The position numbers and the translations under genes are program-made. A stretch of 56,856 nt of DNA from Macrostomum lignano (Eukaryota): NCBI GenBank assembly GCA_002269645.1, contig NIVC01004172.1, positions 1-56,856 of the forward strand, in the 5' to 3' direction. Shown here one piece after another: positions 1-49,592 of this stretch (position 1 is the first letter of the stretch; every line of letters begins with the position of its first letter). The notes below the pieces were generated by a model, which was given only the letters and a program-made list of their open reading frames with translations, did no database searches and was not told where the DNA came from.

Positions 1-1597
1 GAATGCGAAGGGTATGTTTCACCTAGTATCTGTGGCTCTTGCACAATGTCTTTTTTCAAGTACTTCTATTCTATTTTTTTACAGTTTCCATTACCTCAGG
101 TGCGCCTGCACTACATTCATACCTGCCGAGGCTAGTTCATGACAGAAATTTCCAGCAGTATAGATCGAGCACTGCTCACTGGGGCAGGGTTACAGGGCGC
201 TGTTCGAGTTGTTTAAAGCGCAACAGCTGTGCGATTATGCAGAATTTGACACAATCACTGATTGCTTGCAAACTACTCAGAACGACAGTTGAGAAGCTAT
301 CAAGAATTCTTGTTTCTCACACAGGTCCCGTTTGGTTTAACCAGTGGTTTCTCCACAAAACTTTACTCTGACTGCCTTCTCAGACAAAAGACAACTGTGG
401 GCTGCTCAGGGTGACTCATTCTCCGCCTGCGAGAAATCGGCAACTGTTGCGGCAGTGCAGCATTCGAAAATTCTCTGCCACAATGTCTGGCCTCGTGTGT
501 TACATGTTACATCTAGCATAGTGTAAGAGGTTCCTCCGCACCTTGAGCTAGCCGAAATGACTCAGTTTTACAGGCGCCGTGACTCACAATTGCTGGCATG
601 GTGTAAAGTATCGGCCCTGACCCAACTTTGACCCACCTTAAACTAGAGGGTTGCCTCAGCATACAGTTTGACGATGCCCCAGCTCTGCAGAGGTCTGCCA
701 TAGTTAGACATGCTCAAGCATTTTACCTTGGGGGGCCGGGGGGCGAAAAGTTCTCAAGATTGACAGTTAATCGATTATTTTTAAGTGAGCTGCGACCCAC
801 GCCAATATGGAGCGCTTTATAGAAAATCTACTGTCATACGCTCGTAAGAGTCAGAACTACCAAAGAGTGAACTAAATCGACGACTAACAGCAGAAACGTT
901 TCATATGCTTAGTGATAACTGCTTTTTTAGAATTAGAATTATCAATATATTGTAGCGAGGAGTTCGTTGGCACTGCAGCCAGGGCAGCAGACGACAGTTC
1001 TGATGGCACGAGCAATGCTTCTGTAGTGCAGCCGGGTGCAGCTTAATGAGCTTTGTACAGACAATAAAAGCAGTTCCCCACCTGCACCCAACAGTTTACC
1101 TGCACCATTCACTGTACAGGCGAGGGATAAACCGGGGCTGGGGAGGTCTGGCTCGACTGGCACCAGCGGATTTCTGGTTAAGCATAAAAGTACATCTGCG
1201 GTGTGAAGCAAGGTCTGAATGCGTGGCACTTTATTCGCCAGGTATCTTCAGAACAAGTTTCGAAGCTTAAGTGTGCATTCAATTATTTCATTTGGAAAGC
1301 GCAACTGCCGCAATGCCTTCGAGCCAAAACTCTCGCAGCGGGGCGGGGGATCGTCGGGTGCAGGGCCCAGCCGTAGAGAGAACGCGCAGGATTCAAAGGC
1401 AGACGGGGATAAAGCATGACAACGGAACAGACACACTGGGGGACTGCAGTAACAGGCGTTGCGAATGCCATGCAAGGCGGGAAGGGCGGCCTTCGTACCG
1501 TACAGGGGAGTTCAGGTTCGCACAGGCACAGCGCAAGCGGAGAGTTCGGGAGTTCGCCAGGAAGATTTCTGTTTCCTGCCTCTGGAAGAAGAGCCCG

Positions 1598-4500
1598 CTA
1601 GGACAGGCAGGCCACCGGGCCTACAGCCGTTTCCTCGCAGGACCGGACAGCCTCGTCTTCGAGGTCCAGGAAGGCGTCGGAGGACCGGCTCCGCCGGACA
1701 GGCTGCTCCCAGATGGGGCCGCTGATGCCGCCGCCGACGAAGCCATCGCCCTGGATGAGGACGCTCCTCGGCCGTCTGACCATGATTTCGCTGCCAACGG
1801 TGGGCAAGACGCCGAAGCTGAGCTGCGAGAGTGCGCTGGTGGGGCTGCGGTCGCTGGTCCGCTGACGCTTCGCCTCGGGCCGCTCCCCCGCGGCCGCCGC
1901 TTCGCCTGAGCGCCTGAGCTGGCGCTCGAATTCGAGCAGCTGGCCAAGGAAGTTGAAGTTTGGCGAGATGTGGCGCCGGCGTTGTTTTACGAATCTGCCA
2001 GAGCATCGGGATGGTTGGCGGGCAAAATTGCAATGGGCCTGTCAATTAAATCGCATTCGAAAAATGACGGTGAGAAATGAGAAATGACGCATACCTGTAC
2101 GCCTCATCCTGGCTCATGCACCTGTGCTTCATGATGTAGGCAATGGAGAGAGTCGGCGACCGGGAGATGCCTGCCAAGCAGTGGACCAGGCAGCGGCCGG
2201 AGGACTCGCGCACGCGTTCTGAGTTAGAGAGAAAGAAAATCTCCTTAGTAACCCTAGCAAGAGGCTGGTGTGGGTAAAACAATGACGGATCTGAGGATCC
2301 CGCCCTGGCCCATGCGGTCCGGCGGAACTGCAGGCCCGCGGTGACTCAGCGACGCCCTGCATCGGCATTCAGCCCGCCCATCGGCAGGCCGCTAATGGCC
2401 GGGCAGGGCGGGCCGGCCGGGCTTGCAATAAAATATTGGGAATTTGATTGCGCAAAGGTCAAACGCAGCCTAGCTCTGCACCACTGACCAAATGAGTCAC
2501 CGATTGCCAAGCGGTGCGCGTCATTCGCGCAATATCAGCGATATAAAAAATCTCTGAATGGAAGCCTGTAGAGAGAATTAGCAGATTTTCACTGCTACTT
2601 CATGTTTCCTATGGCTGTGAGAATTCGCTAAGCGAGGGCGCTTTATTTCTTAGAAAAATGAATTTGAAGTCTTCGTCTCGCTTAAAATGTCCAAAATCTC
2701 CCCCCCGCGCCCGAGCGTGCGAGCGGCTCCTCCCGAACTGAACTCACCGAGAAAGCTGAAAGCCCGCTGGAAGTGCGGCAGCAGTTTATCTGTGTAGCCG
2801 TCGTTAACCGGGATCCGCAGGAAGTTGCTGTCTGGCACGTGCTGCGACTGCGGACAGGAGATGCTCACGTTGATGACGTGCGTGATGCCGAAGCGCTGCA
2901 TGACCTCAGCGTCCAGGGCATCAGCCTGCGAGCCAATGTACAGATGGGGCAGCACGCAGGTTGGGCCCACGTTGGGCAGCTGAGCCGTTTCCATAGCGGC
3001 CTCGTCGTCGCAGTCCTCGCTGTTGCCGTTCGCCGTCGACTGCTGCTTGCCGGCCAAAGAATGGAACTCGTGCAAGCCGCTGCCTGAAAGGCGTTGGTTC
3101 GAGCCCTGCTTAGCAGCCAGGTGAGCCTGCAGGCCGCAGCCGGCCGGCAGCTGCTGGCTGACCACCGGGGCCGTGGCCTGGCCACCGGTGCAGCCGCCGC
3201 TGCCGCCGCCGCCTCCGCCGCTAAACTTGAGACCACATGGACGGTTTTTGCGGCACAGCACCATGCTCAGTTGAGTTCGGCCCGGTGAGAATTAGGTGAA
3301 ATCTTGTCTTTGAGAGCGAATGATTGTGGCTTGGAGGAGTAAATGCAGTTTGGCTTGGGGAATGGGGCGATCCGCAGATCCTTAAGCTAAAGAGGAGTCC
3401 AGTTTGGCTTTCGTGACCCCGTTGGACTAAGTAGATCCAACTAAATATATCGGTTATTCTTGCACACGAAATTGCGTCAACGCTTTGCAAGCCGCTTCGT
3501 TTGCGATTCTACAGAGCCGCGACTTGGACTTGGGCCGGGGGGCAGCTGAACCAGTTTTATTCTGGCACGGCTAATTTTAGCCAAGCCAACTATGACTCGA
3601 GGCTATTTTTAGCATCGCCCCTGTGCCCCACGAGAGGGTAGATAGAGGGATAGAGGGGGGAGGCAGATCGTCATGGGCGACGGCGGCCAGCCAATAGGAG
3701 GGCGACAGGCTCGGCTGGGGCAACAACTGAGTCAGTGGGTTTACTATTGTGCGGGCAAGCTGGCATTTCTATTAGAGTGCTTGGGAGCTGACTGTAAATT
3801 GCGCACGCTAAGCCCCTGTAGCCTAAAATAAGCCCATATGAAGCATATGAAGGCATTTATAACGTCATGCTAGAATTTAGCCTTAGCCTAAAGCAGTGGA
3901 GCAGGATAATGGGAGCCAGAATGAAAGGCAGGCCATTGAATCGTTGATGCTGACTGCGCCTAGCGCATAGTAAATAGCTGGAATGCTTGCCAAGCACAAT
4001 GGGCAATGGGGGGGAGGGGGCAGAGTGGCCTAGTCCACACTGCATAGCCTCAATAATGCGCGCCAATTCCGACAAATTCAACCAGCCCTAATGCCAGTCA
4101 TGTGATGTGACTCACTTCGGGCCAGACCCCAGTCATGGCAGCACACAGGCCATTCTGCGTATCTGATTCACAGCTTTGATAATTGTTAAAGGAGGGGACA
4201 AAAGTGCAATATGCAGCGAACACAAGAGCTGCGCAATAAGCCCAGTTGGTTCTAAACCTGACCTAACAGTCTGGCGGACACGCTGGGCTCACGTGATTTT
4301 GTAAGATCAGACCAATAAAGGTAAAAATAAGACTTCGTGAACTAGCGGCCTGGCACTGATAAGGCATGTCTTATCTCTGCCTGAGGACAGCAGCGAGAGG
4401 CAATACTGTAACTTTATATCGATCGTATTTTGTAGATAAGCAGAGGCTTGCTGTCCGTTTTGCTTAGCTTAAAACCTGTGCTATTTCTCCAAAAACTCGC

Positions 4501-6362
4501 CTCAATTTTAGTGTCATGTGCGCATCATGCTACTAGCCTACTTGTTTAAGTAGCAATGACAGCATTTTAGGGAGTGGCAGCCAATGAGTAGACGGAAGCG
4601 GTGACTGGTTTTTTCTGGTTGGGGATTTTAAAAATAAAACTTTCTGAGGCAATCAATGCATGCATGCAAAAGACGGATACATGAAATTCATTACTTATTT
4701 TTCGAACAAAATCGATGTCTCCAAATCAAACTGACTTCTCAAGCAGAATTTATTTTATTAGGAAATAAATTTTTTCATAATTAAATTTGCCAGTTCAAAA
4801 TCAATTCTGCCAGTTCAAAATCAAATCTGCCAATTAGTTCTAAATCAAATCTGCCAGTTCAAAATCAAATCTGCCAATTAGTTCTAAATCAAATCTGCTA
4901 GTTCAAAATCAAATTTGCCAGTTCTAACTCAAATCTGCCAGCTCAAAATCAAATCTGCCAGTTCGAAATCAATTCCGCCAGTTCAAAATAAAATTTGCCA
5001 GTTCAAAATCAAATCTGCCAGTTCTAAATCAAATCTGCCAGCTCAAAATCAAATCTGCCAGTTCAAAATCAAATCTGCCAATTAGTTCTAAATCAAATCT
5101 GCCAGTTCAAAATCAAATCTGCTAGTTCAAAATCAAATCTGCTAGTTCAAAATCAAATTTGCCAGTTCTAACTCAAATCTGCCAGTTCAAAATCAAATCT
5201 GCCGGTTCTAAATCAAATCTGCCAGCTCAAAATCAAATCTGCCAGTTCAAAATCAAATCTGCCGGTTCTAAATCAAATCTGCCAGCTCAAAATCAAATCT
5301 GCCAGTTCTAAATCAAATCTGCCAGCTCAAAATCAAATCTACCAGTTCAAAATCAAATCTGCCAGTTCTAAATCAAATCTGCAGTCTCAAAATCAAATCT
5401 GCCAGTTCTAAATCAAATCTGCCAGCTCAAAATCAAATCTGTTAGTTCTAAACCAAATCTGCCAGCTCAAAATCAAATCTGCGGTCTCAAATCTGCGATC
5501 TCCAAATCAAATATGCGGTCTCAAAATCAAATCTGCCCAGTTAAAAATCAAATCTGCCAGCTCAAAACCAAATCTGCCAGTTCAAAATCAAAGCTGGGAG
5601 TTCTAAACCAAATCTGCGTTCTCAAAATCTAATTTGCCTGTTCAAAATCAAATCTGCAATTTCCAAATCAAATCTGCAGTCTCAAAATCAAATCTGCGAT
5701 CTCCAAAAAAACTGCGGTCTCAAAATCGAAGCTGAGACCTTAAATCTGCGATCTCAAAATCAACATTGTGACTTCGATCCGATATCTCTAACTCAACTCT
5801 TGGTACATGAAACTCAAATCTGAAACTCCAGAATCTGATATCTCAATCAAAATAGTGACATCTTAAACCTAAACCTGAACACCCCAGACTCAAAGTTGAC
5901 ACCATAGACTCAACTTTGACTCAACAGACTCAAAGCTGACGTCTCAGTGCCAAAACGAACATTTTAAACGAAAAAATGACACCTAAAAGTTGAGAATGAC
6001 TTCTCAAACCCAAAACTAACATCTAAAAACTGGGATCTGGCGTCTCAAAACTTAAAACTGGCATCACCTCAGTCTCAGATTCCAAGACGATCCAACAAAA
6101 AACTGCATATCAAAATCTCCATCTCAAGCCCGAGACTTCGCTTACCTTTCCTCCGTTTCCGCGCTCCCAGGATGCTGGGGTTGGCCGAGATGGGGCTCAG
6201 CGGGGAGCCGAGGCCCGCCGAGTCCGCCGCCGCCGGAAGCTGCACCGAAAACTCGAGCTGCAGCCGGCCGGGCCGCGCCCTCTTCGCCACCGGCGCGATC
6301 TGGGCCGCCGGGGCGGCCGCAACGGTCCTGTTCTCGTCCTCGCCCGGCTGCTGAGATCGCAT
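1598..6362 (-). CDS. Dual-specificity MAP kinase phosphatase, puckered/DUSP8/DUSP16-like; exons complement(6146-6362, 2748-3083, 2095-2218, 1598-1994), 357 aa
   Basis: DSP catalytic domain: GPTCVLPHLYIGSQ, LRIPVNDGY (general-acid Asp), VHCLAGISRS (HCX5R), ISPNFNFLGQLLEFE. All three introns are GT-AG with matching phases (1,1,2); spliced length 1074 nt = 358 codons. AATAAA on - strand at 1235-1230. Confidence 0.9.
4784..5760. repeat. Minisatellite, 20-bp unit GCCAGTTCAAAATCAAATCT, in DUSP intron 1
   Basis: About 45 tandem units with occasional 24-bp variants; decays toward ~6060. Confidence 0.95.
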
Positions 6363-6599
6363 GATTACTCGGGATGGGGTGCTGCTATCAGGGATGAATT
6401 CGATTATCTGCCACTGCTGAGGCGATGCTACGCTCGAGAGAAAAATGACCGGACTCGAATCGAACTGATGAAGAAGAGTCTGGCTCAGTCCGAACTCGAG
6501 GATTTTATTCGAGAACCGGGGGGAGGGCGGATGCTTCGGGAAAGCCGGTGATGACGCGATGAACGAGAGGAAATTATGAATCAGACGGTGTTCCGCTTA

Positions 6600-6950
6600 G
6601 GGAGCGAAACAGAGGGGAAGAGCTGAGTTGGGAATTTATGCTGCCCGCGGAGGAGGAGGAGGCGGCGGCGGGCCTTCGGGGGAATCCCGCCCGCCCCCAC
6701 CCCCTGGCTGACTCAGCCAGCCAGTGCACAGGCCGCGGACAGACAGGGGGTTCCCCGGCCGGTCGCTAGGCAACGGCCAGCCAACCAGAGCAGATTGCTA
6801 CCGCGGCCGCCAGGACCAACTGACTAATCAGGTTCAATAACGCAGGACACACGCCAAGCCCAATGCGGAAGGGGCGCGCGTGTTAAACACGGGAGAGGCC
6901 GCGGAAATCTCCGGCAATTAGGACGAGTGGCTGGCGGGTGACTAATAGAA
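6600..6950 (-). promoter_or_regulatory. Probable GC-rich proximal promoter of the DUSP gene
   Basis: 250-600 nt upstream of the ATG at 6362. GC boxes (cccgcccgccccc ~6686-6698), AP-1 site at 6709, CCAAT ~6860, ETS-like GCGGAA motifs, TGACTAA at 6821 and 6939. TSS not determinable. Confidence 0.5.
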
Positions 6951-7254
6951 TCATTGCAGAGTTATTGAACAGTCAGATGACTGGCCACTTGGGGGCCGCC
7001 TTATCGCAACTCTTAAGCTTGTCCCTCTCCCCGCAGGTGACTTACGCTAAGCGCCGCGGGGGGTCGCGCGGACCCTCGGAGCGCCCGCAACTGTTTGCGA
7101 TGCGGCTGGGGGAGGGCGGCGGTTTCCATTTTTTGGGCAATTTTACTTGCTTTGTAGAAGTTTCGGACAATGGGGGGCTGGCTGGGGGGGGGGGCAGCCC
7201 AGGACTGCATCATCGGGCTGACGGCCTTTGTTTTAGCGGTCTCTTAATAATCAC

Positions 7255-7517
7255 TCTCTCCTCTCTTAATCACCTCTTTCTTCTTCTCTCTCCGGACTCC
7301 GCCTCCCCTCTCCTTATCTTCTGCCTCTCCTCCCTCTACTCTTCTCTCCTCTCTACTCCCTCTCCTCATCTCCCTCTCCTCGATCTCTCCCTCTCTTCTC
7401 CCGTCCCTACCTCTCCTCTCTCTCCCTCTATCTCTCCCTACCCCTCACCTCTCCCTCTCCCCCTCTCCTCTCCGCTCTCTCCCTCCTCTCCTATCCCTTC
7501 CCTCTTCCTCTCCTTTC
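7255..7517. repeat. Polypyrimidine (CT-rich) low-complexity tract
   Basis: About 260 nt almost entirely C/T on the + strand. Confidence 0.9.
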
Positions 7518-8019
7518 CCGGTGATGTCCAAAAAAGTGACAAATATTCATTGACTCGAATTGAAACCCAGCAGACGAGCTTAGGACACGATCAGATGAGT
7601 GCTAACCTGCTCTGTCATGTAGGAAGCCCCCCGTCTTACCTTAACATGCCTCCACAAGTCTGCAATGTGTTTGCGGCAGCTCGAGTGACTCAACAGCAGA
7701 ACAGGCCGGCAGCCGCGATGATTAACATGGCTAAACAAAGCGAATTCCAACTGCATGGGTGCCTCGGCGACCTCTGACACCCCAAAACTGACTAAGCTGG
7801 GGCGGGGGGGGGGGCTGAGCCGTGCAGTGCGGGCGGGGGCGGCGGCCAGTGAGCGCAGAGTGCTCATTCAGTCCAGGGCCGGAGACCGCAACTGACAATT
7901 ATTAATTGAATGTGATACTAAGCTAGTGTGATTCCTTTTATAGCGCGAGCTACTTTCGATGACGCCAAATTTTTATTGATATAATCGGCCAAGAAGCGAG
8001 CATGGCGCTAAAATAACCA

Positions 8020-8800
8020 TGGTGGGACCAAAATCACCCTGACGGCTCCAAAATATCCTTGACGGCGCCAAAACTAATCCCTATCCTTGGTGGCGCCAGA
8101 ATACCCAGGTGGCGTCCGAATATCCCTGTTGGCGCCAGAATAATTCCTGGTGGTGCCAAAAAATCCCTAAAGGCGCAAAGATCAGTCTGACGTCGCCAAA
8201 ATACCCAGATGACGCCAAAATCACCCTAGTCGCGCCAAAATAATGCATGGTCGCACCAAAAAAATTCCTGGTCGCGCCAAAATATCCCCGGTGACGCAAA
8301 AATATCCCGGTGGCGCCAAAATATTCCCTAATGGCGCCAAAATATTCCCTGGTGGCGCCAAAATGTCCCTGGTGGCGCCAAAATATCCCTGGTCGCGCCA
8401 AAATATCCCCGGTGGCGCAAAAATATCCTGGTGGCGCCAAAATATTCCCTGGTGGCGCCAAAATGTCCCTGGTGGCGCAAAAATATCCATGGTGGCGCCA
8501 AAATATCCCTGGTTTTGCTAAAATATCCCCGGTGGTGCCAAAATATTCCCTCGTGGCGCCAAAAAGTCCCTGGTGGCGCCAAAATGTCCCTGGTGGCGCT
8601 AAAATATCCCTGGTGGCGCCAAAATGTCACTGGTGGCGCCAAATGTCCCTGGTGGCGCTAAAATATCCCTGGTGGCGCCAAAATGTCCCTGGTGGCGCCA
8701 AAATGTCCCTGGTGGCGCTAAAATATCCCTGGTGGCGCCAAAATGTCACTGGTGGCGCCAAATGTCCCTGGTTTTGCTAATCCCCGGTGGCGCCAAAACT
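8020..8800. repeat. Minisatellite, 20-21-bp unit GGTGGCGCCAAAATATCCCT
   Basis: About 35 tandem units, degenerate at the left and homogeneous at the right. Confidence 0.95.
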
Positions 8801-9319
8801 CCTCATGCATGGCGCAGAAATTCGAAGTGACGCGGGTGCATCTGAAACTGGGTGTTTATGACTCCCAGCCCAGTTGTTTTCCTGCACTCCTCCATGCTTT
8901 GAATTCATTAATTTGATGCAGCTGTTAAATAAACTGGAGTTGAAAGTTCTGAGTCACCGATATTGCAGAGTTTAGCCCTAAATTTCAGCTCCTCTGACTC
9001 AGCTCACCGCTTCAGCTCTCAGAGCGCTTTTTGGCTTTAGCGGTCTAATCTGATAATCCATTGAGCTGTTCGCAGCTTCACAGAGATTCTCCATCGAACG
9101 GCGTTAATTTTTGCTAATTCCCGCCGGCAGCAGCTCAAATAGTCAGGGCGCCGATCTGATAAGCAAGTGCCGCCGCTGGGGATGAGGCGTGGGCGCTGAC
9201 TCAAGCTCCCGAGCTGATCCCAAACTGCTCACGCACTGGCACCGCCCCACCCCCCCCCCCTCCTGTGCGAAATTATTGCAGTTGAAACACTGCAACTGGA
9301 GCCAGATTTTGCATGGGGG

Positions 9320-9770
9320 CCCTTGACCCCTCTAATAAATTGGGCCCGTTGACCCTCTCAATGAGACCCAATGAGGGGAGGTCCATTGACCCCTTCTGCA
9401 ACTCGTAGGTGTAAGTCCTAAGTGTGGAGCAATCCTCTAAGTGCGTTTCATAGAGGAGGAGGTCCATTGACCCCTCCTAATGAGTATCATCTCAATAGGA
9501 GGGAGGTCCTTGACCCCTCTAAACTAGCCTCAGGGCAGGTCCGTTGACTTCTACAAATGGTTCTGAATGTGAGGAGAGGTCCACTGACCCCTCTAAATAG
9601 TTCTCAATACGGGGGGGGGGTCCGCTGACCTATTCAAAAAAGTTTTTGGGGTGGTTCGTTGACCCTCATATTGCATCTCAGTGAAGGGAAAACTTTTTGC
9701 GAGTACAAGTCGGAGGAGGTCATCGAAATGAGTTTCATGAAGGGGGAGGTCCGTTGACCCCTGTAAATGA
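9320..9770. repeat. Degenerate tandem repeat with core GGAGGTCC(A/G)TTGACCCCT
   Basis: Core recurs about every 35-40 nt; a related motif (gggaggtcaactgccctcca) occurs twice at ~21532-21590. Confidence 0.7.
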
Positions 9771-10714
9771 GTCTCAAAGATGTGAATTATGAATAAGCCG
9801 TCTTCCGATTTGAGACCCCGCAACGAGACAGTCAATTCGCACAATGGCCGAGATGAGTCACTCGCCACCAGCAGAGCTGGCATTTCTGTTCCCCACTCCC
9901 TAAAATGAAATTTCCCAATCCATAATCCCGGGCGGGGGGATCCGAGGAAAATGCCGCAGTTCAGCTTCGGCTCAAAAGCACCGGGAGGGGGCTGCTCGGT
10001 CACGGCTGTCAAAACCTGAAAGAAGAAATTGCAAATTGGCGCTGAGCCGCAAATATTGATAAGAGAAGGCGCCACTAATCAAATCACGGAGCTGCGACCC
10101 GGCCCTCGCGAGCGAACATTTTTTCTATTGCGCAATGCGCAACTGCCGCAATCAATCTTGAGGCGGTCAGGCTGAGGTTTGGCTCAGGACGAGGGGTCAA
10201 TTAAGGTTACTGGGGGGGCCCTGGCAACAGATCTCGGTCGGGCGCGAGAGAGGCAGAGTCGGCTGGCGGCGCTCAGGTGAGCAGCGAGGATCCCGGCAGC
10301 CCCGCCCTTTGTGAGTCACCGCTCGCCCTTCTCTCACCTTCCGCCTCAGAGCCGCCCTATGGGATGCCAGCTTGCGTGGGGATTTTGCTCGGCAAACATT
10401 TTCTTTGCTGGAGCCTCCCCAACTGCTCTCTTCACTGCCGGGGGACTTGCGCTGCGCCCGCTGCGCCCGCTGCCGACCTCAGTGCCGACGGGACTTGCGT
10501 GGCGGCTGCAACAAAGGCCGGCTGAGTCACACAAAGGCAGCTCAGCGGAAGAGGAGGATTAAAAAAATGCAGCTCTGACTTTTGGGATTATTGCAAACCG
10601 GGGTCGCTCACTGTTGTGGCCTGGCACTCGAAACAAATACCATTGTTAAACTGTTCAATACTTTTTCTTAAATCTAAAAACTTTGCTTTGAAAAGACATT
10701 CGACAGCGCCACAT

Positions 10715-11258
10715 CAAAGAAGTGGCGCCAGAATGGAAGTAGCCCCAGATAGATAGGGGCGCCAGATCAAAGAAAGTGGTGCGTCAGGTAGAATAACTAT
10801 AAACATATTTCCTTTAAAGGCATTCCACAACGCCAGATAGAGGGGGCGCCAGATAGTAAACGGCGCCAGATAGTAAACGGCGCCAGATAGCAAAGGGCGC
10901 CAGATAGTAAAGGGTGTCAGATAGTAAAGGGCGCCAGATAGTAAAGGGTGTCAGATAGTAAAGGGCGCCAGATAGTAAACGGCGTCAGATAGTAAACGGC
11001 GCCAGATAGTAAACGGCGCCAGATAGTAAACGGCGCCAGATAGCAAACGGCGCCAGATAGTAAAGGGCGTCAGATAGTAAAGGGCGCCAGATAGTAAAGG
11101 GCGCCAGATCGTAAGAAGCGCTAGATAGTAAGGGGCGCCTGATAGTAAAGGGCGCCAGATAGTAAAGGGCGCCAGATCGTAAGAAGCGCTAGATAGTAAA
11201 CGGCGCCTGATAGTAAACGGCGCCAGATAGTAAAGGGCGCCAGATAGTAAGCGCCAGA
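10715..11258. repeat. Minisatellite, 17-bp unit GGCGCCAGATAGTAAA(C/G)
   Basis: Regular from ~10845 to 11258 with degenerate upstream copies. Confidence 0.95.
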
Positions 11259-12249
11259 CTTCTAGCAGAAGCACAATGGGAGCCAGAAATTTTATTGTAT
11301 GCTGATGTGCAAAGCTGCCAGGATGTCGAGCTGAAGATTAGGGGTTGGCGCCGCTTCCCCTTTGCCCCTCATTGCTGGAGAAATCAATGCAAATCATCGA
11401 CTCGCACAGAAGGCACGCATCGTTTCAGCCATTGCTCTGAGTTCTGCTCCACCCCAACTAGTTGAGTCTCCGGCACAAATATGGAATTATCATCTGGTTG
11501 ATCATCTCCCCCCCCGGATTGCCCACGCAGAATGCGCCGATTAAAGACCACCCCCGAGCTGACAGGAAGAATCTGCGCCCAGTGAGTCACGCGCTTGACT
11601 GGCAGATGACGCAATTCTGTTCATAGCGCGCCGGTGTCACGGGGGCAGGGGGGGGGGGTAGGGAGCTGCCAGCTTTTGGGAAGACAGCAGCCCATGCGCT
11701 GCACCCCCTCCTCTCCCCTGACAATGAGAGTTCCGTGAGAGAATGAGTAAACCTGGGGGTCGCAAGTGACTAACACGGGGTGCGACAACTGCCCCCCCCC
11801 CCCAGCCGGTGTGTTGGTAGCGTATTGAGGGCCCAAGTGATTACGTAATCAGCAGAATTAGTAAGCAAGCCGGTGCCCCCTGGGGCGGCCACTCACGCCG
11901 TTCCGGTAAAGCCCGAAGTGAATCGAGTTTATAATTGATCGGATAATGCCGCCTTGAGTGGGTGTTAGGTTGAAACTCGAATAATCATAATAACATGATG
12001 ATTAACGAAAATCGACAGTTCATCCATCGGTTCGGGCTGCCTGACACTCGCTGCCTGTCTCAAAAAAATCCTCTGGGAGTAACTCTGTAGCAAGGCGCTG
12101 ATCCTAATAGACTGGCTATGACACTTTAGACTTGGTAGTGTGATCTCTTGTGAAAGAGGCTAATGATCCTTTGGAATGACGCCGATAGAATGGCTATGAC
12201 CCCAATGAGTAGCCATGATCCCACAATATGGTTACGACCCTACAGAATA

Positions 12250-13340
12250 GCTATGACCACACAGAATGACTATGACCACACAGAATGACTATGACCACAC
12301 AGAATGACTATGACCACACAGAATGACTATGACCACACCGAATGACTATGACCACACCGAATGACTATGACCACACCGAATGACTATGAACACCCAGAAT
12401 GGCTATGACCACATAGAATGACTATGACCACACAGAATGGCGATGACCACACAGAATGGCTATGACCACACAGAATGACTATGACCACACAGAATGACTA
12501 TGACCACACAGAATGGCTATGACCACACAGAATGACTATGACCACACAGAATGACTATGACCACACAGAATGACTATGACCACACAGAATGGCTATGACC
12601 ACACAGAATGACTATGGCCACACAGAATGACTATGACCACACAGAATGGCTATGACCACACAGAATGACTATGGCCACACAGAATGACTATGACCACACA
12701 GAATGACTATGACCACACAGAATGACTATGACCACACAGAATGACTATGACCACACAGAATGACTATGACCACACAGAATGACTATGACCACACAGAATG
12801 ACTATGACCACACAGAATGACTATGACCACACAGAATGACTATGAACACACAGAATGGCGATGACCACACAGAATGACTATGACCACACAGAATGACTAT
12901 GACCACACAGAATGACTATGACCACACAGAATGACTATGACCACACAGTGGCTATGACCACACAGTGGCTATGACCACACAGAATGGCGATGACCACACA
13001 GAATGACTATGACCACACAGAGTGACTATGACCACACAGAATGACTATGACCACACAGAATGACTATGACCACACAGAATGACTATGACCACACAGAATG
13101 ACTATGACCACACAGAATGACTATGAACACACAGAATGGCTATGACCACACAGAATGACTATGGCCACACAGAATGACTATGACCACACAGAATGACTAT
13201 GACCACACAGAATGACTATGGCCACACAGAATGACTATGACCACACAGAATGACTATGACCACACAGAATGACTATGACCACACAGAATGACTATGACCA
13301 CACAGAATGACTATGACCACACAGAATGACTATGACCGCA
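12250..13340. repeat. Minisatellite, 19-bp unit CAGAATGACTATGACCACA
   Basis: About 55 highly homogeneous tandem units. Confidence 0.97.
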
Positions 13341-14820
13341 CAGAAAAGCTAAGGCCTCAAAAAAATTTTATGACATCCGCTGTTCCGGAATTCCATTTCG
13401 ATCATTTCGGATGGCCGGATGGCCACCCGATATCCGGAATTCCCAGATCGGCCAACAAACGGCAGCCTCCGCAGTCAGTTGGCGAGTCAGTTCAGCTCTG
13501 CCGCAATGCCGCCGATGCCAAATCTGAATGACGGATGAGCGGCAAGTGTCGCTGCTGCAGCAGGAAATTCCTCATCGCAGTGAAACGGCCAGTTGTAGAG
13601 GAATTCGGACAATGACTTGGGGATGAAGCTTGATGCAGAAGCGACGCCTCGGCCCTGGCCACGCGCGGCTGAGTCACGATCGCGTCGGGTTGCGCAACAC
13701 GGCAGTTTTTTACTGCGCCGAAGCGCTGATTTTTTAAACCGCGACGCACGCAGAAAACTGCGGCCATGCGGTGACTCATGCCGCCAGTCCCGGCCGTCAC
13801 GCGATATGCCAGCACGAGAAGAAACTCCATCGCAACAAGCACAAACCTGTTCTTAGAAATTGATTTTGCAGCCTGTCGGGACGTCACTCGATGTCCTTCT
13901 CCTTTGCGACTTTGGAGCATAAAATGAAGCTGGAATGTCTCGAATACCTCACTGATGCTGAAGCATTCGATCGCCCCCCCCCTTAGTTCTGAGTTCGAAG
14001 TCCAGTGTCTAAGCACACGAACGCTAGGAGAGAATTGACACTCAACAAGATGTTCAAAAAGGTTAAAAAGGAAATTTCCTTGGCATTGCATTGCATTTTG
14101 CATTGGCAGCGGTTCTGTCAACCAGCACAGCAATTATTTACTTTAGGCAGCACATCTTGCAGTTCCGTTTGACCGGAATGGAGGCCAATCATACGTCATC
14201 AGAGTAAAAACTTTTCCGCAGGCAGTGCGAAATTTTGCGCTAAACCGAACGCAACGCGCCCGACTGCGAAGACGGCGCATGGGTGACTCATCTGCTGACG
14301 GCTCGCGCACTTTGCGCGCAGTTCCTGCCGGGGGTTCACAAATCGCGCAAGCCAACAGCAACGCGCGCGCAACCCATAAAGGCGGTAGCGAATTCCCCTC
14401 AGCTCCAGCCTCAGCAGGAGAGCTGTTGGCAGGCAGGCATTCGCTGGCTTCAATATCGGGCTTGGGCCTCTTTTCCGGGGGGGGGGGGCATTTATCGGGG
14501 GCAGCCCGCCGGCTCTGACTCATGCCCGCTTCCGCGCGCGGGGCGCAGACCGGAACGGGGGAGGGCAGAAACTACTGCGGGCATGCCGTTACAACTACTG
14601 GCAGTAGCTGGCAGAGGGTATTTCTAAAATGAGTAAAAGATGTGTAAAGATTGAAATATTTAGAATATTTAAAGAAATATGTTCTCTGAGTTGAATCAAG
14701 GTCCTCAGCGGGAGAGTCCAGCTACTGAAGACTCGCTCTTCATTGTCTATGCCCCAAAAGTGGGTCTGTGGAGAAGCCATGTGAGAATTGGTCGCGCAAT
14801 CAATCTCGCTCGGTGGCAGC

Positions 14821-15370
14821 CAGTGGCGCAACCAGGGGGGGGGGGCGGTTGGGGTTTGCCCACCCCCCCCCCATTATAGGCGGAGACCAAAAAGAAAATC
14901 AAAGGGGGGACAAAGCGAATTTTCGCCAAAATGCAGAGCCGCCCTTGGGTCCTTACCCTCCAGAATCCGCCCCCATGGGTCCTTACCCTCCAGAATCCGC
15001 CCCCATGGGTCCTTACCCTCCAGAATCCGCCCCATGGGTCCTTACCCTCCAGAATCCGCCCCCCATGGGTCCTTACCCTCCAGAATCCGCCCCCCATGGG
15101 TCCTTACCCTCCAGAATCCGCCCCCTTGGGTCCCTACCCTCCAGAATCCGCCCCCCCCTTGGGTCCTTACCCTCCAGAATCCGCCCCCCTTGGGTCCTTA
15201 CCCTCCAGAATCCGCCCCCCCCTTGGGTCCTTACCCTCCAGAATCCGCCCCCCATGGGTCCTTACCCTCCAGAATCCGCCCCCTTGGGTCCCTACCCTCC
15301 AGAATCCGCCCCCTTGGGTCCTTACCCTCCAGAATCCGCCCCCCTCAACAAATTTCTGGTTGCGCTACTG
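14821..15370. mobile_element. hAT-superfamily MITE (550 bp) with an internal ~30-bp tandem repeat
   Basis: 15-bp TIRs CAGTGGCGCAACCAG / CTGGTTGCGCTACTG (14/15 match). Perfect 8-bp TSD GTGGCAGC at 14813-14820 and 15371-15378. About 13 copies of GGGTCCTTACCCTCCAGAATCCGCCCCCAT at ~14945-15345. Confidence 0.9.
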
Positions 15371-18300
15371 GTGGCAGCGTCAATCAGGTCGTACTTTTTT
15401 CGTTGCTAATCTTGTGACAGGGTTCCCGCCCCGCAGGACTCTGCTCATCCGGTGGCATCCTGAGCTGCAGCAAAGCTTTCATCTCTGCATGCTCTGCTCG
15501 CTAAAATTTTTCCTCTCCCACCCTGCCTCCCTCCTCTGCCCATCCCTCCACCTGGCGTGATTCTGGGTCTGCCGGATGAACTGCGTACATTGTGCGCGGC
15601 TGGTGGAAAGTGGTGAAAGTTGCACTCGATCAATCACTTGGATTAGTGAAGTATGATGTATTTTCGAGTACATTTTTATCAAAATGCGGATCATTCCTTT
15701 TTGTGTGAATTTTTCAAGTTCCGAATTCTGTTCAAGGCATCCTCTATTGTTGGGATTTAGGAAATTTCTTTTCTACTTTAGGCATTACTGCCCAATTTGC
15801 TGAGGTCCTGAGCAGGCGCACAAGCGCGTGCGGATACGTACGCTGTCACGCGCACAGGTACACACTCACACAGGGTGTACATGCACATGTACAGCGGCCC
15901 TGACTTTCGTACCCTCTCTGTGCCTTTGGGGGTCCTATAAGACGTTAAATGCGCGAGCAGACCCAAGTCGAGATTTTAATTTAGTCCCAATTTAATGTGA
16001 CTGCACTTGGAATCGAGCACATCAGAGCGCCACGCTACGCCCCCACTGATCCCGGTTAGTACCGCAATTGAAGACTTTCGTCGCAACCTTTAAGGTATCC
16101 CTAATTACGAGCTAACTTGAGCTGCAGTTCACCCTGCCGCGATAAGGTGGGAGCTCTGAGCTGCGGTAGAAATATAAGTTACGGAATTGCGACCACCCAG
16201 CACTGCAGCATCTGTACCGTTGGTCGCACACTTGGTCAATCAAGTTTCTATATACTCATATAGTTGGCTCGACCGTGTCTTTTACTGGTTTTTTACCGGT
16301 TCTTTTACCCCACCGCCGTTGTCAACACTCGAATTAGCCAGTGGGTGGCATCCAAGCACAGGAAGAGGTGGGCTGACGCCACCGATTGCCGGCAATCACG
16401 GGGCGGCTGTCCCCTGTCCCGTCCCGCAGGGCTCAGCTTGGACCCAACTGCAGGGACATCCGGACCTTTCAGGCAATGGCTGTTTTGCCAGGCAGCGCCA
16501 CCTCTAGGGAATCTAGAATATCGAAGATTCTGCCTCTCCAGCGTCGAGAATGCGGACAGACAGGACAGTCTCACCTATCTCGGTCCAAACCCGGACCTAT
16601 CCGACGTTTTCAGGCCCGAGAATCTCTGCCAGCTCGTCCGCTACCCAAGGGCTACCGGGCGAGCGACAATCCAGGAAACCAGCTGCCCGTGGTCGGCAGG
16701 TGTCAGTGTAATGGGCTTTCAACACCTCCCCGCTGTATCGGGATGCCCGGAGCCCTGCAGCTGAGTCAAGTAGGTCAATCGAAAATTTTCGATAATTTTC
16801 GGCACAAAATTAGCGATTTTGAAATTAGCGATTTTAGGCTTTTTATTGCTGAATTCGTTTTTGTGATGTTTTGCTTGTAAATACGTGCAATATATTCTCT
16901 ATGATTTTTATACATTTCAAAACGTACACATACGCAATATTGATTTTGTAGATGCAAAACTTTATAAGAAACCAGCATTTAACAACATCTTACTAACATC
17001 TAACCCTTTCAGGGGTGCCATAAGAGCCGACGCTGCCTTGTGGTTTTTCTGCGGGAGGCTGATGAATTTGCGGAACTTGACGGAGCCTTGCTGAGAAAAC
17101 TGCTATTTCGGAATACATCTTAATAATCCACCCTTGCAGCTGGGCGGCTTCTCATGCATGCAGCTTCAGCAGCCAAACCAAACTCTATTGATAGAACCAC
17201 AGAATGCTGGCTTGGATGCAGACAGCAAATTGTGAGAGGGTCGCTACCTCATGAAACTTTGGCGGGGTTGGGAGAAGTCGGGAGAGGCTGGGGATAATTG
17301 GCAGTCGCCATTTTTTGTAGTCCTAATTTTAGTCCAAACAGAAATAATATTTTTAGCGTCCCAAAACTGACGCAAAGAAGAACTACAGGTAAACCGGGAG
17401 CAGACTGGAGCTTGGGCTACATTTTCTAGGCGAGCGCAAGGCCTGAAGATGCTTTTAATATTTAATTTACGGTAAACCATTAAAGAGATCTGAAGCCACA
17501 AAGGGAGGGGAGAGGACGCCAAGTGCTAGACTGGGAGGCAAGAGAGGCAAGAAACTGCAGAGTTGGAAGCAGGTGCATGTGAGCGGTTCTCTGTGTTCGC
17601 TATCAACTGGAGAGTCACCTAAAATAGAAGCGGCACTTTTTTCAAATCAATTTTGAAGTTAATAACGGACTAGGTAAAAAAAAACCAAATTAATTTCGAA
17701 GATATTGAAACAAACCACATTTCCAGCAACTTCTAAGGCGCTTTTTAAATACAATTTTTAGGCAACTGCAAATTTCTGAATTCTTTTCATTTGGAGTCCA
17801 TACGACTTTTAAACTCATGGATTGCTTCATGGTAGGCGGTTTGTTGCGCTGGGCTCTTAGTTTTAGTTGCTCTGCGGTGGAGTTTCTTAGCTCTGCGACG
17901 GAGGTTACCGAGCTTGGTGTAGTGTGAGCATCTTTTGTGTAGTTTGCATTTTATTAGTTAGTTTCCATATTGTTAATTATTATTTTGCTTATTTGGTCAC
18001 GCGTTTCAATGTACTTTTTTTCTCTTAGTTTAGAGTTTGTTTTGCGTAAGCAGGTTAGAAGTTAGGCGCCAATTCTGTGACTCAGCGGAGGGTTGAGTTT
18101 TCCTGCGTACCCCAAGCTTTGCGCGGCCAGCCAATCAGAACCGGCCTGGACCCTGGCACGCGGCAAAATCCAAGTCTACCCGGCGCCGCGGGCCCAGTGC
18201 AAGTCGGTTTAACGAGCGGCCGGCCAGAGACACCCACCACCCGGCGTGAGGGGGTTTTGAGGGGTTTGACAGTGACTATAAATGAAAGTGTGATTAGCGG

Positions 18301-19069
18301 TCGGATTTTCGGTTTTTCGGCCTTTAGCTTGTCCAATTTCCCGGCCGTTTTGCCCTCTGTTTTCGCGCTTTGAGGCGCTTAATCTGCTCGTCTCCCCCGG
18401 TCCGTGCTTTATTCCCTCGCCCAACCGCACCAGTCTTGTGACGTAACGCCTACGGCAACCTTGTCTGAGGGCGTCGTTATCAAGCGCGGTTTAGATAGAG
18501 ACAGGCGGATTTGACAAAGTACGTGGCCTCGACCCGAGGGCCTCAGTGTCGCACTGAAGGGCAGCGCTGGTAGAACTTAGCCAGAGCTCCACTGAACCGT
18601 CAATTCGTCAGGGCTCTCGTTTGAGAGTAGGTTCTGGGTTTAGGCCAGTGTTTAGGAGTCTTTCTCCGTGGTCCCGTGTTCGGTTCCTTCTTCTTCTTCA
18701 AAGCTGAGATCCGCTCGCCAGTAGCGTAATTAATTTATTATCGTTGTTATCCGTGCTCAAATTTATCTGCGTCGCGAACTGCGTTGAGAACTTGTAATCA
18801 ATTTGAAGTAACTAAATTAAATCGTCTAAGTCAACTACTAGCATAGTCAGCCATTCTTAAACTAGGATTATCACGCTCTAAATCTGCTTGAATCGTTTCA
18901 CCCGTGTTTCTTCTTTACTTGTACCGTACCTGCAACTATCGGAGAAAGATTGGTAGAACTCGCCGACCGACGATAGGCAATAGGGCCAATAGTTTAAAAT
19001 CTTTGAACGCTCCAAAAATAGGTTTGTTTAGGGCCTAATTTATTTGCCGTATAGCATACTGTATTCATC

Positions 19070-21614: not shown

Positions 21615-21908
21615 CCGCTGTGCTGAGCCAAATCGTGTGCGAGGGCCAGCACCTGTCCATCTCGTGCCCGCGGGGCTCCATCAACATCCACTTCGCTAAG
21701 TTCGGCAAGTCAGAGGAGTTCAGCACTGACTGCGTCAGACACACGAGCTCCATGAACAACTGCTGGAGCTCCAACTCGCTCAGCTACACAAAGTCGCGGT
21801 GTGAGGGTGCTCAGACCTGCAGCATCTCCGCATCCAACAGTGCTTTTGGCTCCGATCCCTGCCCCAAGAACTACAAATACCTGTTCGTGAATTACAGCTG
21901 CCCGGAGG
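21615..21908 (+). CDS. Exon encoding a SUEL/galactose-rhamnose-binding lectin domain; rest of gene not located
   Basis: IVCEGQHLSISCPRGSINIHFAKFG...C...C...SRCEGAQTCSISASNSAFGSDPCPKNYKYLFVNYSC has the 8-Cys SUEL pattern with DPC...KYL. Acceptor ttccag| and donor |GTGAGT give a symmetric phase 1-1 exon. Confidence 0.85.
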
Positions 21909-49517: not shown

Positions 49518-49592
49518 TTAGGGTTAGGGTTAGGGTTAGGGTTAGGGTTAGGGTTAGGGTTAGGGTTAGGGTTAGGCTAGGGTTAGGGTTAG
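49518..49592 (+). repeat. Interstitial telomere-type repeat (TTAGGG)n
   Basis: Nine perfect TTAGGG plus about three imperfect units; a degenerate paralogous tract at ~49255-49313. Confidence 0.93.

What the first reader, a model, noticed from the sequence alone, without database searches (positions are those of the whole stretch)
412..18084. About ten-fold AP-1 site enrichment across an 18-kb domain around a puckered-like phosphatase: candidate JNK feedback or wound-response enhancer cluster
Seen: at least 22 exact TGASTCA sites in the first 18.1 kb (about 2 expected at uniform composition), versus two found by eye in the other ~39 kb (20559, 31517). They lie in unique GC-rich islands between the minisatellites, upstream, intronic and downstream, often paired (558/580, 8950/8995, 10312/10523, 13670/13772, 14284/14516). 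Established: Drosophila puckered and related MKPs are AP-1-induced negative regulators of JNK. Inference: a multi-module feedback enhancer landscape, possibly injury-responsive in a regenerating flatworm.
Basis: partly seen in the sequence, partly recalled or inferred. Interest (0 to 1): 0.72.

Follow-up and report, generated by a model that had tools for sequence, protein, structure and literature searches.

The report
AP-1 site cluster around flatworm JNK-phosphatase gene
An 18-kb stretch of the flatworm Macrostomum lignano genome around a JNK/p38-type MAP-kinase phosphatase gene carries 23 independent exact AP-1-type sites (about 15 times background), and an anciently duplicated copy of the gene shows the same enrichment, so this is very probably a stress/JNK-responsive control region of a well-known kind, not yet described in this animal.

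Summary
TGASTCA occurs 23 times in window 412-18084 and 4 times in the other 38.8 kb. After masking tandem repeats it is the top non-homopolymer 7-mer (22 observed, 1.45 expected, P 7.5e-19), while its 20 one-mismatch variants occur 0-5 times each. The flanks are unrelated, so the sites are not repeat copies. Density is 1.27/kb against 0.083/kb in 72 kb of other M. lignano DNA, and 0.11/kb in GC-matched tiles. The gene is BOX15_Mlig009817g1 on the minus strand (CDS 3264-1598, three exons). It is a DUSP8/16 (MKP-7/VHP-1)-type phosphatase, not the puckered/DUSP10 orthologue. Eighteen sites lie 0.46-14.8 kb upstream of the ATG, two in intron 1 and three about 1 kb past the stop. The paralogue (63% identical over the aligned region, no alignable non-coding DNA) has 8 sites in its upstream 6.3 kb, where the heptamer is again the top 7-mer. 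Best reading: a homotypic bZIP (AP-1) site domain that gives JNK/stress-inducible negative feedback. Not supported: pairing beyond chance, and strict puckered orthology. Still open: AP-1 versus CNC/small-Maf (7 of 23 sites are TGACTCAGC), and wound inducibility. New member of a known kind.

The parts
412..18084 (.). TRE-dense domain: 23 exact TGASTCA sites, 1.27 per kb
   Evidence: Bounded on the left by 8.4 kb with no site beyond window position 1 (L001 13271-21669). Bounded on the right by a LINE-like fragment at 18.9-20 kb and a SUEL-lectin gene at 21.6 kb.
2748..3264 (-). DUSP8/16-like gene (BOX15_Mlig009817g1), coding exon 1 (ATG at 3264)
   Evidence: Exact splice model whose translation equals P0001.
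2095..2218 (-). Coding exon 2 (contains the HCLAGISRS active site)
1598..1994 (-). Coding exon 3, including the stop codon
3340..3475 (-). 5'UTR segment conserved with the transcript of the 80%-identical orthologue. It is colinear with the ATG, so the TSS lies at or upstream of about 3475.
   Evidence: L005 nt 1-131 aligns at 73% identity.
1230..1235 (-). Only AATAAA (gene sense) downstream of the stop codon; likely poly(A) signal (inferred)
412..418 (.). TRE gTGACTCAt, 1.18 kb 3' of the stop
558..564 (.). TRE aTGACTCAg, 3' of the gene
580..586 (.). TRE gTGACTCAc, 3' of the gene
2342..2348 (.). TRE gTGACTCAgc (ARE-like extension), intron 1
2493..2499 (.). TRE (gTGACTCAt when oriented), intron 1
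3728..3734 (.). Proximal TRE, 464 bp upstream of the ATG and about 250 bp upstream of the conserved 5'UTR start
   Evidence: The paralogue has a site at -446.
4108..4114 (.). TRE gTGACTCAc, -844
   Evidence: The paralogue has a site at -963.
5917..5923 (.). TRE inside a small 20-bp tandem array (5885-5940); the only site in repeat sequence
6709..6715 (.). gcTGACTCAgc, a symmetric MARE-like site flanked by kB-like palindromes at 6679 and 6746
7686..7692 (.). TRE gTGACTCAa, -4.4 kb
8950..8956 (.). TRE, -5.7 kb
8995..9001 (.). TRE cTGACTCAgc (ARE-like), -5.7 kb
9197..9203 (.). TRE gcTGACTCAa, -5.9 kb
9854..9860 (.). TRE, -6.6 kb
10312..10318 (.). TRE next to a GC box (CCCGCCC at 10301), -7.0 kb
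10523..10529 (.). TRE (gTGACTCAgc when oriented; ARE-like), -7.3 kb
11583..11589 (.). TRE, -8.3 kb
13670..13676 (.). TRE (gTGACTCAgc when oriented; ARE-like), -10.4 kb
13772..13778 (.). TRE gTGACTCAt, -10.5 kb
14284..14290 (.). TRE gTGACTCAt, -11.0 kb
14516..14522 (.). TRE cTGACTCAt, -11.3 kb
16762..16768 (.). TRE (tTGACTCAgc when oriented; ARE-like), -13.5 kb
18078..18084 (.). Most distal TRE, gTGACTCAgc (ARE-like), -14.8 kb

Best explanation
Window 412-18084 is the cis-regulatory domain of a compact M. lignano MAP-kinase phosphatase gene of the DUSP8/16 (MKP-7/VHP-1) type. The domain is seeded with 23 independent, exact TRE heptamers (TGASTCA) that are kept by selection as binding sites for AP-1-family bZIP dimers. 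The proposed mechanism has four steps. Stress or wound signals activate JNK/p38. The kinases activate Jun/Fos-type dimers. The dimers occupy the many TREs (proximal promoter at about -250 bp from the transcript start, intron 1, 3' flank, and some 15 kb of upstream DNA) and raise transcription of the phosphatase. The phosphatase then dephosphorylates JNK/p38 and closes a negative-feedback loop. This is the same logic as Drosophila puckered. Shown here: the enrichment, its motif specificity, its independence from repeats, its boundaries, the gene identity and structure, and the repeat of the enrichment at the paralogue. Inferred: which bZIP factor binds, that this DUSP is the target gene, JNK dependence, and wound or regeneration inducibility.
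For: (1) 23 sites against about 2 expected; with tandem repeats masked, top non-homopolymer 7-mer of 8192, P 7.5e-19. (2) The exact heptamer occurs 22 times while each one-mismatch variant occurs 0-5 times; the slightly raised variants are TGACGCA (5) and TGACTAA (4). (3) Flanks are unrelated and there are no dispersed repeats. (4) Density is 15-fold above 72 kb of other M. lignano DNA and 11-fold above GC-matched tiles; in that background the motif is, if anything, under-represented (6 observed, 10.5 expected). (5) No strand bias (14 against 9, P 0.40), as expected for recognition of double-stranded DNA and not for an RNA-level signal. (6) Independent replicate: the paralogue locus L003 has 8 sites in its upstream 6.3 kb (1.27/kb, the same density), none in L003 1-3700 and one in the 10 kb downstream of the gene. 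There TGACTCA is the single top 7-mer (8 observed, 0.57 expected, P 1.7e-7), while only coding exons align between the two loci. The two most proximal sites sit at similar distances (-464 and -844 against -446 and -963). (7) The gene is a DSPc phosphatase closest to DUSP16 and DUSP8, the JNK/p38-selective MKPs. (8) Of 24 pre-specified TF motifs only the TRE is strongly and consistently enriched at both loci (16-fold, P 6.5e-26). (9) Precedent: puckered feedback and TRE reporters (PMC3324472); AP-1 sites in damage- and regeneration-responsive enhancers (PMC4786413, PMC12450469, PMC9922731, PMC10077677).
Against: There are no expression, accessibility or binding data. The genome-wide background could only be sampled (72 kb), not computed. 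The sites are spread almost uniformly over the unique sequence (median gap 585 bp) and are not packed into enhancer-sized modules, which is unusual for classical enhancers. No positional or sequence conservation of any site could be shown between the paralogues. The near-identical assembly copies L001 and L002 keep all shared sites but are too similar (about 99%) to be informative. The flanks are not the symmetric AP-1 optimum: G at -1 in 15 sites against C at +7 in 4 (P 0.019), and TGACTCAGC in 7 of 23. The encoded protein lacks a detectable rhodanese docking domain, so its MAPK selectivity is inferred from the catalytic domain only. An unannotated transcript within 4-18 kb cannot be excluded as the true target.
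Confidence: 0.6

Rival explanations
1. The sites are mainly antioxidant-response / NF-E2-type elements bound by a CNC (Nrf-like) and small-Maf heterodimer. The phosphatase would then be induced by oxidative or xenobiotic stress and not by JNK-to-AP-1 feedback.
For: When all sites are oriented as TGACTCA, position -1 is G in 15 of 23 (P 9e-5 against base composition), +7 is G in 10 of 23 and +8 is C in 11 of 23. TGACTCAGC occurs 7 times against about 1.6 expected (P 7e-4). The asymmetry of G at -1 against C at +7 (15 against 4, P 0.019) fits RTGACTCAGC and does not fit a symmetric AP-1 optimum. Site 6709 is gcTGACTCAgc. ARE and TRE are distinct but overlapping bZIP elements (PMC3324472).
Against: Sixteen of the 23 sites lack the GC extension. 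TGACNNNGC as a class is only 1.6-fold enriched and TGCTGAS 1.2-fold. The preference for TGACTCAGC over GCTGACTCA (7 against 2) is not significant (P 0.18). The nine sites of the paralogue have symmetric flanks. The invariant part is the full TRE heptamer, which AP-1 binds without any extension.
Confidence: 0.17
2. The sites are functional bZIP sites, but they serve something other than inducible feedback on this DUSP. Possibilities are constitutive tissue-specific (for example epidermal) expression, or control of an unannotated transcript within 4-18 kb.
For: Most sites (16 of 23) lie more than 2.5 kb upstream of the ATG, and the gene-to-enhancer assignment is by proximity only. The even scatter of sites is not typical of a single inducible enhancer.
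Against: No gene is annotated upstream of the DUSP in the 10 kb held in L001. ORFs in 6-14 kb have no Pfam match, and no Rfam family is present. The paralogue, another DUSP8/16-like gene, shows the same enrichment immediately upstream of its ATG, which ties the motif to this gene family and not to a neighbour. Sites also lie in the proximal promoter and in intron 1.
Confidence: 0.13
3. The enrichment is a non-functional by-product of local composition, repeat history or mutational bias.
For: The region is rich in minisatellites and homopolymer runs, so its sequence evolution is unusual. The genome-wide background was only sampled.
Against: The order-1, order-3 and order-4 Markov models all rank the heptamer first or second. 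One-mismatch variants are at expectation. Flanks are unrelated. GC-matched background tiles have 0.11/kb. An unrelated sequence upstream of the paralogue shows the same enrichment.
Confidence: 0.05

Closest known systems
Drosophila puckered (puc): JNK to AP-1 to MKP negative-feedback loop
   Same: A JNK-class dual-specificity phosphatase gene whose regulatory DNA is (here: is predicted to be) driven by AP-1, so that pathway activity induces its own inhibitor (PMC3324472, citing Martin-Blanco 1998).
   Different: The Macrostomum gene is DUSP8/16-like and not the puc/DUSP10 orthologue. Its protein lacks a detectable rhodanese domain. Inducibility is not shown. The site count (23 exact heptamers scattered over 18 kb) is a feature of sequence and not a mapped enhancer.
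C. elegans vhp-1 / vertebrate DUSP8 and DUSP16 (MKP-7)
   Same: Closest catalytic-domain relatives (DUSP16 1.5e-53, DUSP8 2.4e-49). Many DUSP8/16-named hits at 1e-50 to 1e-55. JNK/p38-selective MKP class (established knowledge).
   Different: The Macrostomum proteins start at the kinase-interaction-motif position (VLCRKNRPCGL aligned to LVLRRLQQGKL) and lack the roughly 75 residues of the rhodanese fold that precede it in the orthologues. Nothing is known here about cis-regulation of the relatives.
Damage- and regeneration-responsive enhancers with AP-1 motifs (Drosophila wg/Wnt6 BRV118 and DRMS enhancers; zebrafish/killifish RREs)
   Same: AP-1 heptamers as the key input of injury-activated regulatory DNA in regenerating animals (PMC4786413, PMC12450469, PMC9922731, PMC10077677). 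One of these papers describes scattered ('splashed') AP-1 motifs.
   Different: Those are functionally mapped elements of a few hundred bp, usually with partner motifs (E-box, STAT, Grh). Here no partner motif is enriched, the sites are not modular, and function is untested.
Antioxidant response element / NF-E2 site (CNC-small Maf)
   Same: Seven of the 23 sites read TGACTCAGC, and G dominates at -1.
   Different: Most sites lack the GC extension, and the generic ARE pattern is barely enriched.

Membership tests
Homotypic AP-1 (TRE) site cluster / AP-1-responsive regulatory domain | Exact TGASTCA heptamers over-represented against composition and against other DNA of the same genome | tested here: met
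   23 sites against 2.1 expected. Masked: 22 against 1.45, P 7.5e-19. Density 1.27/kb against 0.083/kb in 72 kb of background.
Homotypic AP-1 (TRE) site cluster / AP-1-responsive regulatory domain | Sites are independent occurrences, not copies of a repeat | tested here: met
   Flank identity 25.6% on average and 40% at most; no BLAST hits elsewhere; 22 of 23 outside tandem repeats.
Homotypic AP-1 (TRE) site cluster / AP-1-responsive regulatory domain | Specific to the motif (near-variants not similarly enriched) and no strand bias | tested here: met
   One-mismatch variants 0-5 each against 22. Strand split 14 against 9, P 0.40.
Homotypic AP-1 (TRE) site cluster / AP-1-responsive regulatory domain | Evolutionary retention | tested here: inconclusive
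   Motif density is reproduced at the paralogue (8 sites in 6.3 kb, top 7-mer), but no site-level alignment is possible. Orthologous genomic loci from other species were not available; L005 and L006 are transcripts.
Homotypic AP-1 (TRE) site cluster / AP-1-responsive regulatory domain | Occupancy by Jun/Fos, and JNK- or injury-dependent activity | not testable with these tools
   Needs ATAC-seq or CUT&RUN, RNA-seq and reporters.
Classical MAP-kinase phosphatase, JNK/p38-selective subgroup (DUSP8/DUSP16/VHP-1) | DSPc catalytic domain with the HCxxGxxRS/T active site | tested here: met
   PF00782 at 1.3e-41; VHCLAGISRS in exon 2.
Classical MAP-kinase phosphatase, JNK/p38-selective subgroup (DUSP8/DUSP16/VHP-1) | Closest similarity to DUSP8/16 rather than to other MKPs | tested here: met
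   DUSP16 1.5e-53 and DUSP8 2.4e-49, against DUSP10 7.4e-36 and DUSP1/2/4/6/7/9 at 1e-32 to 1e-35.
Classical MAP-kinase phosphatase, JNK/p38-selective subgroup (DUSP8/DUSP16/VHP-1) | N-terminal rhodanese (CH2) domain carrying the kinase-interaction motif | tested here: not met
   No PF00581 hit in P0001 or P0006 even at E up to 1, while the mite orthologue P0009 has one. The alignment shows that the proteins start at the KIM position and keep only a GGF..F..P..CE remnant. A KIM-like VLCRK is present, but its function is unknown.
Classical MAP-kinase phosphatase, JNK/p38-selective subgroup (DUSP8/DUSP16/VHP-1) | Dephosphorylates JNK/p38 in preference to ERK | not testable with these tools
   Biochemical property, inferred from subfamily only.
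puckered / DUSP10 orthologue | Best similarity to DUSP10/puckered | tested here: not met
   DUSP10 scores about 17 orders of magnitude weaker than DUSP16. Puckered- and DUSP10-named insect hits are at 1e-31 to 1e-35, against 1e-50 to 1e-55 for DUSP8/16-named hits.
ARE / NF-E2 element (CNC-small Maf) | TGACnnnGC core with an R at -1 | tested here: inconclusive
   TGACTCAGC in 7 of 23 sites (P 7e-4) and G at -1 in 15 of 23. But 16 of 23 lack the GC, and generic TGACNNNGC is only 1.6-fold enriched.

The most novel reading that the evidence does not exclude
Selection here acts on the number and density of TRE heptamers spread evenly over a whole 15-18 kb domain, not on discrete enhancer modules. 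This 'distributed homotypic' architecture has been kept at the same density (1.27 sites per kb) in two DUSP8/16 paralogues through complete turnover of the surrounding sequence. The array would then work as an analogue gain control or AP-1 sink that scales phosphatase output to JNK/AP-1 dose. That would be a design principle for feedback strength and not just one more AP-1 target.
Probability: 0.15. Interest if true: 0.65.

Novelty: new member of a known kind. Interest (0 to 1): 0.45.

Why it matters
AP-1-driven induction of a JNK phosphatase is textbook feedback, so the principle is not new. No cis-regulatory element for JNK/AP-1 or wound signalling has been described in Macrostomum lignano, which its literature describes as the only flatworm with stable transgenesis (PMC8717057; PMC5730564). 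A natural, very TRE-dense promoter and upstream region, for example window 3265-4200 or 3265-7700, is an obvious candidate for a live JNK/AP-1 or wound reporter in a regenerating, transparent animal. Intact-versus-mutated motif reporters already work there (PMC12801592). The equal motif density at two old paralogues with no alignable sequence is also a clean case of binding-site turnover under stabilising selection.

Tried and rejected
(1) Genome background through transposon proteins. One search, with a gypsy integrase and a cut-off that was too strict, gave one M. lignano protein and therefore one 11-kb locus (L004). The background is therefore a 72-kb sample and not genome-wide. (2) Near-identical assembly copies L001 and L002 (99.3% and 99.7%) keep all 16 and 7 shared sites but have no power as a conservation test. 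(3) Sensitive BLAST of the domain against the paralogue locus aligned only coding exons. (4) An apparent shared module (TRE, kB-like palindrome, GC box; window 6679-6760 and L003 7229-7310) is not significant as an alignment (score 21 against shuffles 19 +/- 2.5; 65 of 300 shuffles reach it). It is motif co-occurrence only. (5) The 'NF-kB' enrichment in the panel was inflated by overlapping matches. (6) CRE, Grh, SRF, EGR, ETS, STAT, TEAD, RUNX, FOX, HSE, E-box and C/EBP motifs are not enriched. (7) Site pairing is not beyond random placement. (8) ORFs inside 6-14 kb have no Pfam match, and the whole window has no Rfam family. (9) The orthologue contigs L005 and L006 are transcripts, so no cross-species promoter comparison was possible. 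They did locate the 5'UTR. (10) Literature searches for AP-1/JNK cis-regulation in Macrostomum, and for this gene, found nothing.


Full report
OBSERVATION. A search for TGASTCA finds 27 sites in the 56.9-kb window, against a mean of 7.2 and a maximum of 13 in 100 dinucleotide-preserving shuffles. Twenty-three sites lie between 412 and 18084. TGACTCA and TGAGTCA are reverse complements, so this is one canonical 7-mer.

After masking the tandem repeats listed by TRF, 14.1 kb of the first 18.1 kb remain. They hold 22 copies against 1.45 expected under an order-1 model (P 7.5e-19, about 6e-15 after correction for 8192 canonical 7-mers). In an unbiased ranking of all 7-mers only the C/G homopolymer run scores higher. 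The next entries are overlapping extensions of the same motif: GTGACTC, GGTGACT and GACTCAG. Under order-3 and order-4 models the heptamer stays first or second.

Each of the 20 one-mismatch variants occurs 0-5 times, so the signal belongs to the exact heptamer and not to local composition. The flanks of the 23 sites all differ. Anchored flank identity averages 25.6% with a maximum of 40%, and 200-bp site-centred segments have no BLAST match elsewhere in the window. Only site 5917 lies in a small tandem array. The sites are therefore 23 independent occurrences.

BACKGROUND AND BOUNDARIES. The window is Macrostomum lignano: the DUSP exons are 100% identical to BOX15_Mlig009817g1 (P0001). Two contigs of assembly GCA_002269645.1 (L001, L002) are about 99% identical copies of window 1-11322 and 1-5477. 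L001 runs 8.4 kb past window position 1 and has no site there.

The available background consists of that stretch, the rest of the window, the parts of the paralogue locus outside its upstream region, and one unrelated locus (L004). It totals 72.3 kb with 6 sites, or 0.083/kb, against 1.27/kb in the domain. At the background rate 1.5 sites are expected in 18.1 kb (P 1e-19). Taking only 500-bp tiles with GC of 0.5 or more gives 1.27/kb against 0.11/kb. In the background the motif is, if anything, under-represented (6 observed, 10.5 expected). My two attempts to widen it failed.

THE GENE. The phosphatase lies on the minus strand. A splice model that translates exactly to P0001 has exon 1 at 3264-2748, exon 2 at 2218-2095 and exon 3 at 1994-1598.

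The catalytic domain is closest to human DUSP16 (1.5e-53) and DUSP8 (2.4e-49), and well separated from DUSP10 (7.4e-36) and from the ERK-type and nuclear MKPs. Database hits named DUSP8, DUSP16 or vhp-1 dominate, while puckered-named proteins score about 4e-31. The gene therefore belongs to the JNK/p38-selective MKP group but is not the puckered/DUSP10 orthologue.

Pfam finds the DSPc domain (1.3e-41) but no rhodanese domain in this protein or in its paralogue, although a mite orthologue has one. In an alignment the Macrostomum proteins begin at the position of the kinase-interaction motif: VLCRKNRPCGL aligns with LVLRRLQQGKL. They keep only a GGF..F..P..CE remnant of the domain.

The 5'UTR of the transcript of an 80%-identical orthologue (L005) aligns colinearly to window 3475-3340, so the transcript starts at or upstream of about 3475. 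A single AATAAA lies 368 nt after the stop. Relative to this model, 18 sites lie 0.46-14.8 kb upstream of the ATG, and the nearest is about 250 bp upstream of the conserved 5'UTR start. Two sites lie in intron 1, and three lie 1.0-1.2 kb past the stop, beyond the likely poly(A) signal.

No other gene is annotated in the 10 kb upstream held in L001. ORFs in 6-14 kb have no Pfam match, and no Rfam family is present. To the right the domain ends at a LINE-like fragment (18.9-20 kb) and a SUEL-lectin gene (21.6 kb).

INDEPENDENT REPLICATE. M. lignano has a second DUSP8/16-like gene (P0006, BOX15_Mlig006006g1), 63% identical over the aligned region and located on another contig (L003). Each copy has its own closer relatives among the transcript-derived proteins: P0003 and P0004 with P0001, and P0005 with P0006. 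The duplication therefore looks old. Only the coding exons align between the two loci, at 69-74% identity.

L003 nevertheless has 8 TGASTCA sites in the 6.3 kb upstream of its ATG, which is 1.27/kb, the same density as the window domain. It has none in its first 3.7 kb and one in the 10 kb downstream of the gene. In an unbiased ranking of that upstream region TGACTCA is the single most over-represented 7-mer (8 observed, 0.57 expected, P 1.7e-7). The two most proximal sites sit at similar distances from the ATG in the two genes: -464 and -844 against -446 and -963. Maintenance or repeated gain of the same heptamer density in unalignable DNA next to two members of one gene family is the strongest in-silico argument that the sites are functional and belong to the DUSP genes.

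WHICH FACTOR. There is no strand bias (14 against 9, P 0.40), as expected for a site recognised in double-stranded DNA. In a pre-specified panel of 24 motifs only the TRE is strongly enriched at both loci (16-fold, P 6.5e-26). CRE, Grh, SRF, EGR, ETS, STAT, TEAD, RUNX, FOX, HSE, E-box and C/EBP motifs are at background. GC boxes are enriched in the window domain only, and the apparent NF-kB signal came from overlapping matches.

With all sites oriented as TGACTCA, G dominates at -1 (15 of 23, P 9e-5) and GC follows the core in 7 of 23 sites (P 7e-4). The asymmetry of G at -1 against C at +7 is 15 against 4 (P 0.019). The resulting GTGACTCAGC is the NF-E2/ARE form bound by CNC-small-Maf dimers. 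However, 16 sites lack the extension, generic TGACNNNGC is barely enriched, and the paralogue's sites are symmetric. AP-1 (Jun/Fos-type) remains the default reading, with a CNC/Maf contribution as the main rival.

ARCHITECTURE. But the number of short gaps is what random placement in the unique sequence gives (P 0.30-0.69). The sites are spread fairly evenly, with a median gap of 585 bp and 3-5 sites per 3 kb as far as 15 kb. This is a distributed homotypic array and not a set of compact modules. A candidate shared module in both paralogues (TRE plus kB-like palindrome plus GC box, about 3 kb upstream) does not align better than shuffled sequence.

MECHANISM AND COMPARISON. The best-supported explanation is a stress/JNK-responsive regulatory domain. 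In it AP-1-family dimers drive a JNK/p38 phosphatase that then damps the pathway, which is the logic established for Drosophila puckered (PMC3324472). AP-1 motifs are also the recurrent input of damage- and regeneration-responsive enhancers in flies and fish (PMC4786413, PMC12450469, PMC9922731, PMC10077677), so wound inducibility is plausible but not shown.

The enrichment, its specificity, its boundaries, the gene identity and structure, and the paralogue replicate are shown here. Factor identity, the target-gene assignment, JNK dependence and injury response are inferred. I found no report of AP-1/JNK cis-regulation in Macrostomum.

VERDICT. This is a new member of a known kind. Interest is moderate: the circuit is expected, but the signal is unusually clean, it replicates in a paralogue, and it can be tested directly in the one flatworm with stable transgenesis and working motif-mutation reporters (PMC5730564, PMC8717057, PMC12801592).

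Noticed in passing
window 6679-6760; L003 7229-7314: In both DUSP paralogues, about 3 kb upstream of the ATG, a kB-like palindrome (GGGGAATCCC / GGGGGTTCCCC in the window; GGGGGATTCCCC in L003) lies next to a GC box and within 30-80 bp of a TRE. The local alignment is not significant, so this may be motif co-occurrence by chance.
   Followed up: partly
window 3440-3480 (minus strand); L005 1-30; L006 55-85: At the start of the conserved 5'UTR / core promoter the window has TTGACGCAAT, a C/EBP-ATF-type bZIP site. The 70%-identical orthologue's transcript has two TTGCGCAA palindromes at the equivalent place. This may be a second, conserved bZIP input close to the TSS. A CCAAT box (cctATTGGctgg, about 3695), a MEF2-like CTAAAAATAG (about 3610) and a TATA-like gatatattta (about 3445) also lie in the proximal region.
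   Followed up: no
P0001 / P0006 N-termini (window 3264-3100, minus strand): Both Macrostomum DUSP8/16-like proteins, and the transcript-derived relatives P0003-P0005, start with MVLCRK at the position of the kinase-interaction motif. They lack the first ~75 residues of the rhodanese domain found in mite and priapulid orthologues. This looks like a lineage-specific truncation of the MAPK-docking domain.
   Followed up: partly
window 49518-49592: Interstitial run of 12.7 TTAGGG telomere-type repeats, next to a 4.2-kb AT-rich 23-bp satellite (44631-48832, about 183 copies).
   Followed up: no
window 1-18100: The DUSP regulatory domain is interrupted by at least six unrelated minisatellites with periods of 17-30 bp and 13-58 copies (4774-5697, 8004-8772, 10831-11250, 12242-13345, 14938-15345) plus a CT-rich tract at 7302-7518. 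The paralogue's upstream region is broken up in the same way by different minisatellites. C/G homopolymer heptamers are also very frequent (53 in 14 kb).
   Followed up: no
window 18994-20000, 24558-25055, 27883-33350, 34702-36179, 50253-52531: The rest of the window is largely transposon-derived. It holds a LINE-like endonuclease fragment, copia-like gag and integrase, a roughly 5-kb block of long ORFs with no Pfam match (possibly a DNA transposon), and a gypsy-like gag/integrase whose C-terminus runs into a 12-bp repeat (52170-52455). The window's TE ORFs do not appear as annotated proteins in the searched collection.
   Followed up: partly
window 21620-21970 (+), 53164-54344 (-), 56235-56684 (-): Other genes in the window are a SUEL/rhamnose-binding lectin domain (1.8e-19), an MFS-type transporter (weak Pfam hits on two adjacent ORFs) and a weak Fumble/pantothenate-kinase-like ORF at the window's end. 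None of them has TRE enrichment nearby.
   Followed up: no
P0002 (UniRef A0A1I8G2B8) against P0001: A second M. lignano database entry is identical to P0001 except that it lacks the start of exon 3 (VKQRRRHISPNFNFLGQLLEFERQL...). It is probably an alternative or mis-spliced gene model that removes the end of the catalytic domain.
   Followed up: no
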